DNA of 64,000 bases, taken from contig NC_043007.1 of assembly GCF_006345805.1 (NCBI RefSeq), forward strand, positions 15,004,001 to 15,068,000, given 5' to 3'. This document shows positions 28,499 through 28,544 of the stretch, piece after piece; the stretch's first letter is position 1, and every line of letters starts with the position of its first letter. The stretch comes from Octopus sinensis (Eukaryota). A program made the translations under genes and the position numbers. Below the pieces are notes generated by a model that was not told the origin of the DNA, did no database searches, and worked only from the letters and a program-made list of their open reading frames with translations.

Positions 28499-28544
28499 AA
28501 CACAACGTTTCGGCTGATATAATCTCCAGCCTTCTTCAGGTGTC
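28499..28544 (-). ncRNA. Predicted minimal type I hammerhead ribozyme in a Penelope-like repeat (GUU site)
   Basis: GACAC-CTGAAGA-A-GGCTG(loop)CAGCC-GAA-ACGT-T-GTGTT; 5 bp stems I and II, palindromic stem III. Confidence 0.65.

What the first reader, a model, noticed from the sequence alone, without database searches (positions are those of the whole stretch)
28499..28544. Minimal hammerhead in sense orientation inside the VWA7-like pre-mRNA
Seen on the minus strand: GACAC CTGAAGA A GGCTG-gagattatat-CAGCC GAA ACGT T GTGTT, giving 5 bp stem I, 5 bp stem II, palindromic ACGT stem III and a GUU site (cut between 28504 and 28503). An extra A after A9 is known from natural viroid hammerheads such as CChMVd. 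It is transcribed with the gene, in the intron between exons I and J and about 270 nt from exon I. Inference: it could cut the intron, probably only as an intermolecular dimer, and so affect splicing or transcript level.
Basis: partly seen in the sequence, partly recalled or inferred. Interest (0 to 1): 0.72.

Follow-up and report, generated by a model that had tools for sequence, protein, structure and literature searches.

The report
Retrotransposon-type minimal hammerhead in octopus intron
The sequence is a real minimal hammerhead ribozyme motif with an intact core, but it is most likely one of several leftover copies of a Penelope-like retrotransposon scattered through the introns of an octopus VWA7 gene, not a device that controls the gene.

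Summary
Window 28544-28499 (minus strand) reads exactly as reported. It lies in sense orientation in the intron between two exons of the Octopus sinensis VWA7 gene, 273 nt after the upstream exon. It is far beyond chance: 0 of 300 shuffles gave this type, and a relaxed descriptor found 4 such motifs against 0.035 expected.

These are an extra nucleotide after A9, a G10.1-C11.1 pair, no helix III and a palindromic ACGU.

A metagenome scan with the candidate's core and helix II found at least 120 loci. Many show covarying stem I, and some sit beside RT plus GIY-YIG (PLE) reading frames.

The window holds four more, degenerate copies on both strands. Four of the five motifs are followed about 92-103 nt later by a (TA)n microsatellite (the fifth by a mixed one). 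At least five elements form a 5'-truncated repeat family.

The candidate is the only copy with an intact core, and it has no partner. A trans dimer rests on a 4-bp helix worth about -1.7 kcal/mol. Published single min-HHRs do not cleave in vitro.

Verdict: an ordinary transposon relic and a new member of a known kind. A regulatory role is unsupported.

The parts
28499..28544 (-). Minimal hammerhead motif with an intact core. Helix I is 28544-28540 paired with 28503-28499. Core CUGAAGA is 28539-28533. The extra A is 28532. Helix II is 28531-28526 paired with 28517-28512, with loop 28525-28518. GAA is 28511-28509. The palindrome ACGU is 28508-28505. U17 is 28504, so the predicted cut is 28504|28503.
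   Evidence: It scores 44.6 bits (E 9e-11) against a covariance model built only from metagenome min-HHRs. That model shares the positions used to fish those sequences.
28404..28498 (-). About 95-100 nt of 3' region between the hammerhead and the (TA)n microsatellite; presumed 3' part of the retroelement copy.
   Evidence: Three copies (candidate, copies 2 and 3) show the same spacing of 98-103 nt. No sequence similarity to the other copies.
28343..28403 (.). (TA)n microsatellite abutting the presumed 3' end of the element.
   Evidence: The background chance of a (TA)n locus starting 85-115 nt downstream of a random position is 0.018.
28545..28640 (-). Sequence upstream of the hammerhead, up to the (CAA)n and (CTT)n microsatellites; possible 5'-truncated body of the element. 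The boundary is not defined.
   Evidence: unique in the window, no similarity to other copies.
28817..28976 (-).
   Evidence: 100% identical to residues 488-540 of P0002; tblastn.
27220..27294 (-).
   Evidence: tblastn of P0002 residues 541-565, 100% identity.
8153..8185 (+). Degenerate min-HHR copy 2 (UUGAAGA, C3 to U; extra A; ACGU; U17), antisense to the gene. (TA)n starts 103 nt downstream.
   Evidence: Covariance model hit, 29.7 bits, E 2.8e-6.
23226..23263 (+). Degenerate min-HHR copy 3 (CUGUUGA, A6 to U; helix II GAGC/GCUC; helix I UCUUU/AAAGA), antisense to the gene. (TA)n starts 98 nt downstream.
   Evidence: 20.2 bits, E 0.0018.
31455..31706 (-). Copy 5: an 80%-identical paralogue, about 235 nt long, of the copy 3 element. 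Its degenerate hammerhead is at 31634-31593 and it ends in (TA)n. Sense orientation.
   Evidence: BLAST, alignment A3, nhmmer E 6.9e-85.
52385..52417 (-). Degenerate min-HHR copy 4 (CCGACGA, U4 to C), sense orientation. It is a diverged member of the copy 3/5 family, 5'-truncated at the hammerhead.
   Evidence: nhmmer 52420-52210, E 1.1e-4.
384..525 (+). 5'-truncated member of the copy 3/5 family. Only the part 3' of the hammerhead plus (TA)n remains.
   Evidence: nhmmer E 1.7e-32, profile positions 142-294.

Best explanation
The motif is a min-HHR, the minimal type I hammerhead without helix III that metazoan Penelope-like elements (PLEs) carry in their terminal repeats near the 3' end. Here it sits on a short copy, either 5'-truncated or non-autonomous, that inserted next to a (TA)n microsatellite in an intron of the Octopus sinensis VWA7 gene. 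The copy happens to lie in the sense orientation.

In its parent element such a motif is thought to work only when two identical copies lie on one transcript. The palindromic ACGU segments then pair into an extended helix III, which allows slow cleavage that may need a protein. As a lone copy in this intron it is transcribed with the pre-mRNA. It most likely does not cleave and has no role in VWA7 expression.

Shown here: the motif, its significance, its family traits, sister copies in the window, and the PLE association of the same hammerhead class elsewhere. Inferred: a PLE origin for this particular copy, and its inactivity.
For: 1. All published min-HHR hallmarks are present (PMC4209133; sequence). 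These are a nucleotide between A9 and G10.1, a G10.1-C11.1 pair, palindromic 15.2-16.2 with no loop 3, a short 5-bp helix I and a longer helix II.

About half of the 85 distinct sequences have a stem I of 3 bp or more, against my estimate of under about 10% by chance. Sixteen motifs of the same 4-nt-palindrome class show stem I covariation: 4 of 5 pairs carry double changes, and 0 of 500 shuffles reach the observed score.

3. One family, from ENA assembly ERZ1740055, matches the candidate in core, N7, the extra A, helix II, ACGU and U17, but has TTTCC/GGAAA as stem I. Its copies have varied 5' ends and a common 3' end about 95-130 nt after the hammerhead.

4. Reading frames beside such hammerheads carry RVT_1 plus a C-terminal GIY-YIG domain, which is the PLE architecture.

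5. The window itself holds four more motifs of this class, each with the extra A (copy 5 has ACAU for ACGU) and each with one inactivating core change. Their helices differ but still pair. A relaxed descriptor finds 4 motifs against 0.035 expected.

6. In three copies (the candidate, copies 2 and 3) a (TA)n locus starts 98-103 nt after the hammerhead, against a background chance of 0.018 per position. Copy 5 has (TA)n at about 92 nt by my reading of the alignment. Copy 4 has a mixed microsatellite at about 85-95 nt, also read by eye. PLEs are reported to favour microsatellite or AT-rich targets.

7. Copies 3, 4 and 5 and two further fragments form a family with a shared 3' end and different 5' ends.

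8. The five motifs lie 3 sense and 2 antisense, so there is no orientation bias.

9. Single min-HHRs show no detectable cleavage in vitro. The ACGU duplex is worth only -1.7 kcal/mol.
Against: - No PLE reading frame or remnant lies in the window.
- The candidate's flanks match no other copy in the window or in the fetched loci. Its membership of a repeat family in the octopus genome is therefore not shown directly.
- It is the only one of the five with an intact core. That could mean a young insertion, luck or selection.
- The metagenome hits were found with a pattern taken from the candidate, so similarity in those positions is not independent evidence.
- Rfam reports no hammerhead here. It also misses PLE-type min-HHRs of the same class in three metagenome loci, so this says little either way.
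Confidence: 0.8

Rival explanations
1. It is a functional intronic ribozyme. On this view the sense-strand min-HHR cleaves the nascent VWA7 intron, as a dimer or with protein help, and so lowers or shapes the transcript.
For: The core is fully intact, whereas the four sister copies each carry an inactivating change. It lies in sense orientation inside the pre-mRNA. The isolated motif folds into helices I and II. At least one PLE hammerhead cleaves when its element's protein is present.
Against: No compatible partner lies on the sense strand of the window. The other sense copies have different stem I sequences and broken cores. A trans dimer gains only about -1.7 kcal/mol. Single min-HHRs are inactive in vitro. 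No RNA-seq ends were seen at the Anolis PLE hammerhead site. In a 241-nt context the hammerhead fold is not the minimum-energy one. Sister copies lie in both orientations in the same gene. Conservation could not be tested.
Confidence: 0.03
2. It is a chance match to a loosely defined hammerhead consensus.
For: The motif is short. No Rfam hammerhead model matches.
Against: None of 300 shuffles gave this type, and relaxed versions appear 0.003 to 0.06 times per window. Features nobody selected for match the published min-HHR traits. Four more motifs of the same class lie in the window against 0.035 expected. Three copies share the same spacing to (TA)n.
Confidence: 0.02
3. The carrier is not a truncated autonomous PLE. 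It is instead a short non-autonomous element, SINE-like or a solo retrozyme monomer of about 200-260 nt, that carries a min-HHR and a (TA)n tail and is mobilised in trans.
For: Copies 3 and 5 share both their 5' and 3' ends over about 235 nt. No PLE coding remnant lies anywhere in the window. A 2026 preprint argues that animal retrozymes derive from PLE terminal repeats.
Against: Other members of the same family have different 5' ends, as expected from 5' truncation of something longer. There are no tandem arrays such as define retrozymes. With only 64 kb of this genome in hand the full-length element cannot be defined.
Confidence: 0.25

Closest known systems
min-HHR of metazoan Penelope-like elements (Cervera and De la Pena 2014, PMC4209133)
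   Same: Type I topology. Intact CUGANGA...GAAA core. An unpaired nucleotide between A9 and G10.1. A G10.1-C11.1 pair. No helix III or loop 3, with palindromic 15.2-16.2. Helix I of 4-5 bp and a longer helix II. Mostly solitary dispersed copies. A predicted need for a dimer.
   Different: No PLE terminal repeat or reading frame lies next to this copy. Helix II has 6 pairs rather than the 7-8 described for Schistosoma. Cleavage was not tested.
Canonical type I hammerheads of animal satellite DNA and non-LTR retrozymes (newt, Schistosoma, mussel, axolotl; PMC7229834)
   Same: Type I topology, a weak helix III with a palindromic element, activity as dimers, and a link with retroelements.
   Different: Those have a real, if short, helix III hairpin. 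Many of them (newt, Schistosoma, one of the two axolotl groups, though not the mussel families) also have conserved loop 1-loop 2 tertiary contacts. They sit in tandem repeats of roughly 170-400 bp. Here there is no helix III, there are no tandem repeats, and Rfam Hammerhead_1 does not match.
[quoted passage not shown]
   Same: A hammerhead in sense orientation inside an intron of a protein-coding gene.
   Different: From my own knowledge, those are canonical and stable as monomers, and are conserved across species. This one is a minimal form that depends on a dimer, lies among sister transposon copies, and its conservation is untested.
CChMVd plus-strand hammerhead with an extra A after A9 (De la Pena and Flores 2001; the virus name is from my own knowledge)
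   Same: An extra nucleotide between A9 and G10.1 that the core tolerates.
   Different: That is a type III viroid ribozyme with three full helices and is unrelated in origin.

Membership tests
PLE-type minimal hammerhead (min-HHR) | Intact catalytic core: C3 U4 G5 A6 N7 G8 A9 ... G12 A13 A14, A15.1, U16.1, and H17 not G. | tested here: met
   CUGAAGA ... GAA A..U U.
PLE-type minimal hammerhead (min-HHR) | One unpaired nucleotide between A9 and G10.1. | tested here: met
   The extra A at 28532. The trait is listed in PMC4209133.
PLE-type minimal hammerhead (min-HHR) | A conserved G10.1-C11.1 pair at the base of helix II. | tested here: met
   G28531 pairs with C28512.
PLE-type minimal hammerhead (min-HHR) | No helix III hairpin; positions 15.1-16.1 are contiguous and palindromic. 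| tested here: met
   ACGU at 28508-28505.
PLE-type minimal hammerhead (min-HHR) | A short helix I (4-5 bp) and a longer helix II. | tested here: met
   Helix I has 5 bp. Helix II has 5 Watson-Crick pairs plus 1 G-U.
PLE-type minimal hammerhead (min-HHR) | Belongs to multi-copy families in the same genome that show covariation. | tested here: inconclusive
   Four other motifs of the class lie in the window, with different but still pairing helices. None shares flanking sequence with the candidate.
PLE-type minimal hammerhead (min-HHR) | Located in the terminal repeat of a PLE, next to an RT plus GIY-YIG reading frame. | tested here: not met
   No PLE coding remnant lies in the window. The source paper says most copies are solitary, so this feature is not required of every copy. 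The same hammerhead class lies beside RT plus GIY-YIG frames in metagenome loci.
PLE-type minimal hammerhead (min-HHR) | Self-cleavage as a dimer or multimer. | not testable with these tools
   This needs in vitro transcription of monomer and tandem constructs.
Canonical type I hammerhead (Rfam RF00163) | Three helices including a helix III hairpin, and a match to the family model. | tested here: not met
   There is no helix III. No hammerhead family matched at E up to 10 in a 701-nt search.
Non-LTR retrozyme | Tandem repeats, each unit carrying a hammerhead. | tested here: not met
   No second copy or tandem unit lies near the candidate.
Conserved intronic regulatory hammerhead | Conservation at the orthologous intron across species. 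| not testable with these tools
   DNA for the O. vulgaris and Argonauta hians loci could not be fetched. The related contig L001 does not reach this intron, and its introns do not align.

The most novel reading that the evidence does not exclude
The one copy with an intact core, sitting in sense orientation, may have been kept because it does cleave the nascent VWA7 intron in vivo. That could happen with help from a PLE-encoded or host RNA-binding protein, or by pairing between neighbouring nascent transcripts. The transposon hammerhead would then act as a brake on the gene.
Probability: 0.03. Interest if true: 0.55.

Novelty: new member of a known kind. Interest (0 to 1): 0.17.

Why it matters
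As found, it matters little. It adds an octopus example to a class of transposon-borne minimal hammerheads already described in thousands of copies across animal genomes.

Two modest points are useful. First, Rfam does not detect this class, so genome annotations will miss such motifs, and scans should use a min-HHR descriptor. Second, the octopus copies show a regular layout of hammerhead, about 100 nt, then (TA)n. This may help define the 3' end and target preference of the carrier elements.

If the intact sense copy did cleave in vivo, it would be a rare case of a transposon ribozyme co-opted inside a host intron.

Tried and rejected
- **Rfam.** The gathering search of the whole window found only a tRNA-like hit. 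The permissive search around the motif found no hammerhead. As a control, Rfam also missed PLE-type min-HHRs of the same class in three metagenome loci, so this negative carries no weight.
- **Self-BLAST.** BLAST of the motif and its flanks against the window found only microsatellites.
- **Similarity between copies.** Local alignment of the flanks of the first three copies found nothing significant.
- **Misleading alignment.** MAFFT placed a stretch just upstream of the candidate (about 28582-28551) against the hammerheads of the other copies. The covariance model gives that stretch no score, so I treat it as spurious.
- **27067-27020 (minus strand).** This weak model hit (E 0.89) has no helix II and is not a hammerhead.
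- **My error.** Model R1 was built with a structure string shifted by one column and should be ignored. R2 is the correct model.
- **Shuffle run.** A 3000-shuffle run timed out. I rely on the 300- and 200-shuffle runs and an analytic estimate.
- **Orthologous introns.** O. vulgaris P0002 is not on record. The gene ranges for P0005 (O. vulgaris) and P0006 (Argonauta) are too long for DNA to be returned. L001, from a distant relative, aligns only in exons.
- **SINE.** The abundant tRNA-derived SINE contains GAAACGTT but no hammerhead.
- **PLE proteins.** tblastn of PLE reading frames against the window found no remnant.

Full report
**1. The observation**

The minus strand from 28544 to 28499 reads GACAC CTGAAGA A GGCTGG agattata TCAGCC GAA ACGT T GTGTT.
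- Helix I has 5 bp, one of them G-U.
- The core CUGANGA...GAA is intact.
- One extra A lies between A9 and G10.1.
- Helix II has five Watson-Crick pairs plus a G-U, closed by an 8-nt loop.
- The four bases ACGU stand where helix III should be.
- U17 places the predicted cut between 28504 and 28503.

My descriptor scan finds this as the only exact-core motif on either strand of the window. In 300 dinucleotide-preserving shuffles this type never appeared. A relaxed palindromic version appeared 0.003 times per window, and a very permissive version 0.06 times. My analytic estimate from base composition is about 4e-5 per window for the exact type.

Taken alone, 63 nt around the motif fold into helix I plus helix II as the minimum-energy structure (-13 kcal/mol, z = -2.46). 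Within 241 nt a competing fold wins.

**2. Organism and gene**

The translated upstream exon is 100% identical to residues 488-540 of a 967-residue protein, P0002. Its sources name P0002 as Octopus vulgaris VWA7, and it clusters with the O. sinensis VWA7 isoforms.

The O. sinensis locus L122 (GCA_006345805.1, CM016869.1:15004575-15062100) is 100% identical to the window in all four stretches compared, about 1.8 kb in total. The window is therefore O. sinensis.

tblastn places 17 exon segments on the minus strand between 56241 and 2578. The exon before the motif is 28976-28817 and has a GT donor. The next exon is 27294-27220. The motif thus lies in that 1.5-kb intron, in sense orientation, 273 nt after the exon.

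**3. What kind of hammerhead it is**

Cervera and De la Pena (PMC4209133) defined a minimal hammerhead, the min-HHR, in the terminal repeats of metazoan Penelope-like elements (PLEs). Its traits are:
- no helix III or loop 3;
- a palindromic 15.2-16.2;
- a conserved G10.1-C11.1 pair;
- a short helix I of 4-5 bp and a longer helix II.

Thousands of copies occur per genome, and most are solitary, presumably from truncated elements. The candidate has every one of these traits.

Rfam reports no hammerhead here. It also misses min-HHRs of this class in three metagenome loci used as a control, so that negative is uninformative.

**4. Relatives elsewhere**

I scanned metagenome contigs with CTGANGANGGCTG, a gap of 3-20 nt, then CAGCCGAAACGT. 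I had roughly estimated fewer than one chance match.

About half of the 85 distinct sequences have a stem I of 3 bp or more in one of two registers. My estimate is that under about 10% would by chance.

Sixteen distinct motifs share the candidate's 4-nt palindrome. Their stem I covaries: 4 of 5 pairs carry double changes, 18 cells in all, and 0 of 500 shuffles reach the covariation score. One caveat applies, because I had preselected sequences with a stem I of 3 bp or more.

One family, from ENA assembly ERZ1740055, equals the candidate in core, N7, the extra A, helix II, ACGU and U17. Its stem I is TTTCC/GGAAA rather than GACAC/GTGTT. Its copies have varied 5' ends and a common 3' boundary about 95-130 nt after the hammerhead.

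[quoted passage not shown] The hammerhead lies 100-230 nt after the frame, or about 70 nt before the next frame in tandem copies.

Similarity between the candidate and these loci is confined to the motif itself.

**5. Sister copies in the window**

I built a covariance model from the 16 metagenome motifs (R2) and ran it over the window without filters. It gave the candidate 44.6 bits. It also found two more hits, at 8149-8189 (+) with 29.7 bits and E 2.8e-6, and at 23224-23265 (+) with 20.2 bits and E 0.0018.

A relaxed descriptor found four motifs against 0.035 expected per shuffle, with a maximum of 1 in 200 shuffles. The fourth is at 52417-52385 (-).

A fifth, at 31634-31593 (-), lies in an 80%-identical paralogue, about 235 nt long, of the element at 23.2 kb.

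All five carry the extra A, and four carry ACGU (copy 5 has ACAU). The four sister copies each have one core change expected to kill activity: C3U, A6U, A6U and U4C. Their helices I and II differ from the candidate's yet still pair.

In three copies (the candidate, copies 2 and 3) a (TA)n locus begins 98-103 nt after the hammerhead. Copy 5 shows (TA)n about 92 nt downstream and copy 4 a mixed microsatellite about 85-95 nt downstream; I read both distances by eye. Only 1.8% of window positions have a (TA)n locus starting 85-115 nt downstream.

A profile of the 23.2-kb and 31.6-kb elements finds further members. One is at 384-525 (+), with E 1.7e-32, and starts just after the hammerhead. Another is at 40532-40406 (-). 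The copy at 52.4 kb also belongs, and it starts at the hammerhead.

A shared 3' end with differing 5' ends is the usual footprint of target-primed reverse transcription. PLEs are reported to insert preferentially in microsatellite or AT-rich DNA, and to carry the hammerhead near the 3' end. Downstream (TA) runs are also about four-fold enriched after the metagenome hammerheads.

The five motifs lie three in sense and two in antisense relative to the gene.

**6. Can it act where it sits?**

The window has no second sense-strand copy compatible with the candidate. The two other sense copies have different stem I sequences and broken cores. By my reasoning, a double hammerhead needs matching helix I strands, so they could not be partners.

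For two separate pre-mRNAs, the only net gain on dimerising is the ACGU/ACGU helix. That is worth -1.7 kcal/mol, which corresponds to a dissociation constant in the tens of millimolar.

In the source paper a single min-HHR showed no detectable cleavage, and dimers or trimers cleaved weakly. The Anolis PLE hammerhead cleaved only with the element's protein present, and no RNA-seq reads ended at its cleavage site. No PLE coding sequence is present in the window.

**7. Conclusion**

The best reading is a min-HHR of the PLE type, carried on a short truncated or non-autonomous retroelement copy. It inserted beside a (TA)n microsatellite in a VWA7 intron. It is transcribed passively and most likely inert.

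The weak points are these:
- The candidate's flanks match nothing else in the 64 kb.
- The rest of the octopus genome was not available.
- Orthologous introns could not be fetched.
- It is the only copy with an intact core, which leaves a small chance of retained activity.

I rate it a new member of a known kind, of low interest.

Noticed in passing
window 8718-8745, 19202-19229, 39846-39873, 40650-40677, 41686-41713, 45874-45901, 53579-53606, 62059-62086 (all -); 4354-4381 and 63397-63424 (+): A tRNA-derived SINE (GGCGGCGAGCTGGCAGAAACGTTAGCAC...GTTCAAATTCCGCCGAGATCGAC) occurs 10 times. Eight copies are in the sense orientation of the VWA7 gene. It contains GAAACGTT but no hammerhead.
   Followed up: partly
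window 16574-16645 (+): Rfam reports a tRNA match (39.8 bits, above the gathering score), but ARAGORN finds no tRNA gene in the window. It may be a SINE-derived tRNA-like segment.
   Followed up: partly
window 24068-25273 (+) and 22475-22735 (+): A non-LTR retrotransposon fragment with a zf-RVT domain and a Tc1/mariner-type DDE_3 transposase fragment lie inside VWA7 introns, both antisense to the gene.
   Followed up: partly
whole window: There are 37 separate (TA)n loci of six or more units in 64 kb, plus many CA, CTT, TATC and GAT microsatellites. Several (TA)n loci mark the 3' ends of hammerhead-bearing elements.
   Followed up: partly
window 28551-28582 (-): Just upstream of the intact motif, CCTTGGGAATGAGAACTCAGTTTCGAAATTTCC loosely resembles a decayed hammerhead, and MAFFT aligned it with the other copies' hammerheads. 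The covariance model gives it no score, so it is probably spurious.
   Followed up: partly
loci L002-L121 (metagenome contigs, many from insect-gut samples): A second min-HHR class with a 6-nt near-palindrome (ACGUGU) and mostly an extra U is abundant in these contigs. A few hits (for example L042, L055, L080) look like hammerheads with a long helix III, of a different and possibly microbial type.
   Followed up: no
window 20726-20932, 7713-7886, 14588-14878 (-): The O. vulgaris protein P0002 matches these exon regions at only 64-87% identity, while the other exons are 95-100% identical. This suggests differences in annotation or exon boundaries between the two octopus gene models.
   Followed up: no
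window 23226-23263 (+) and 31593-31634 (-): The two paralogous elements share the same A6-to-U core change (CUGUUGA and CUGUAGA). Their source element may therefore have spread with a hammerhead core expected to be inactive.
   Followed up: no
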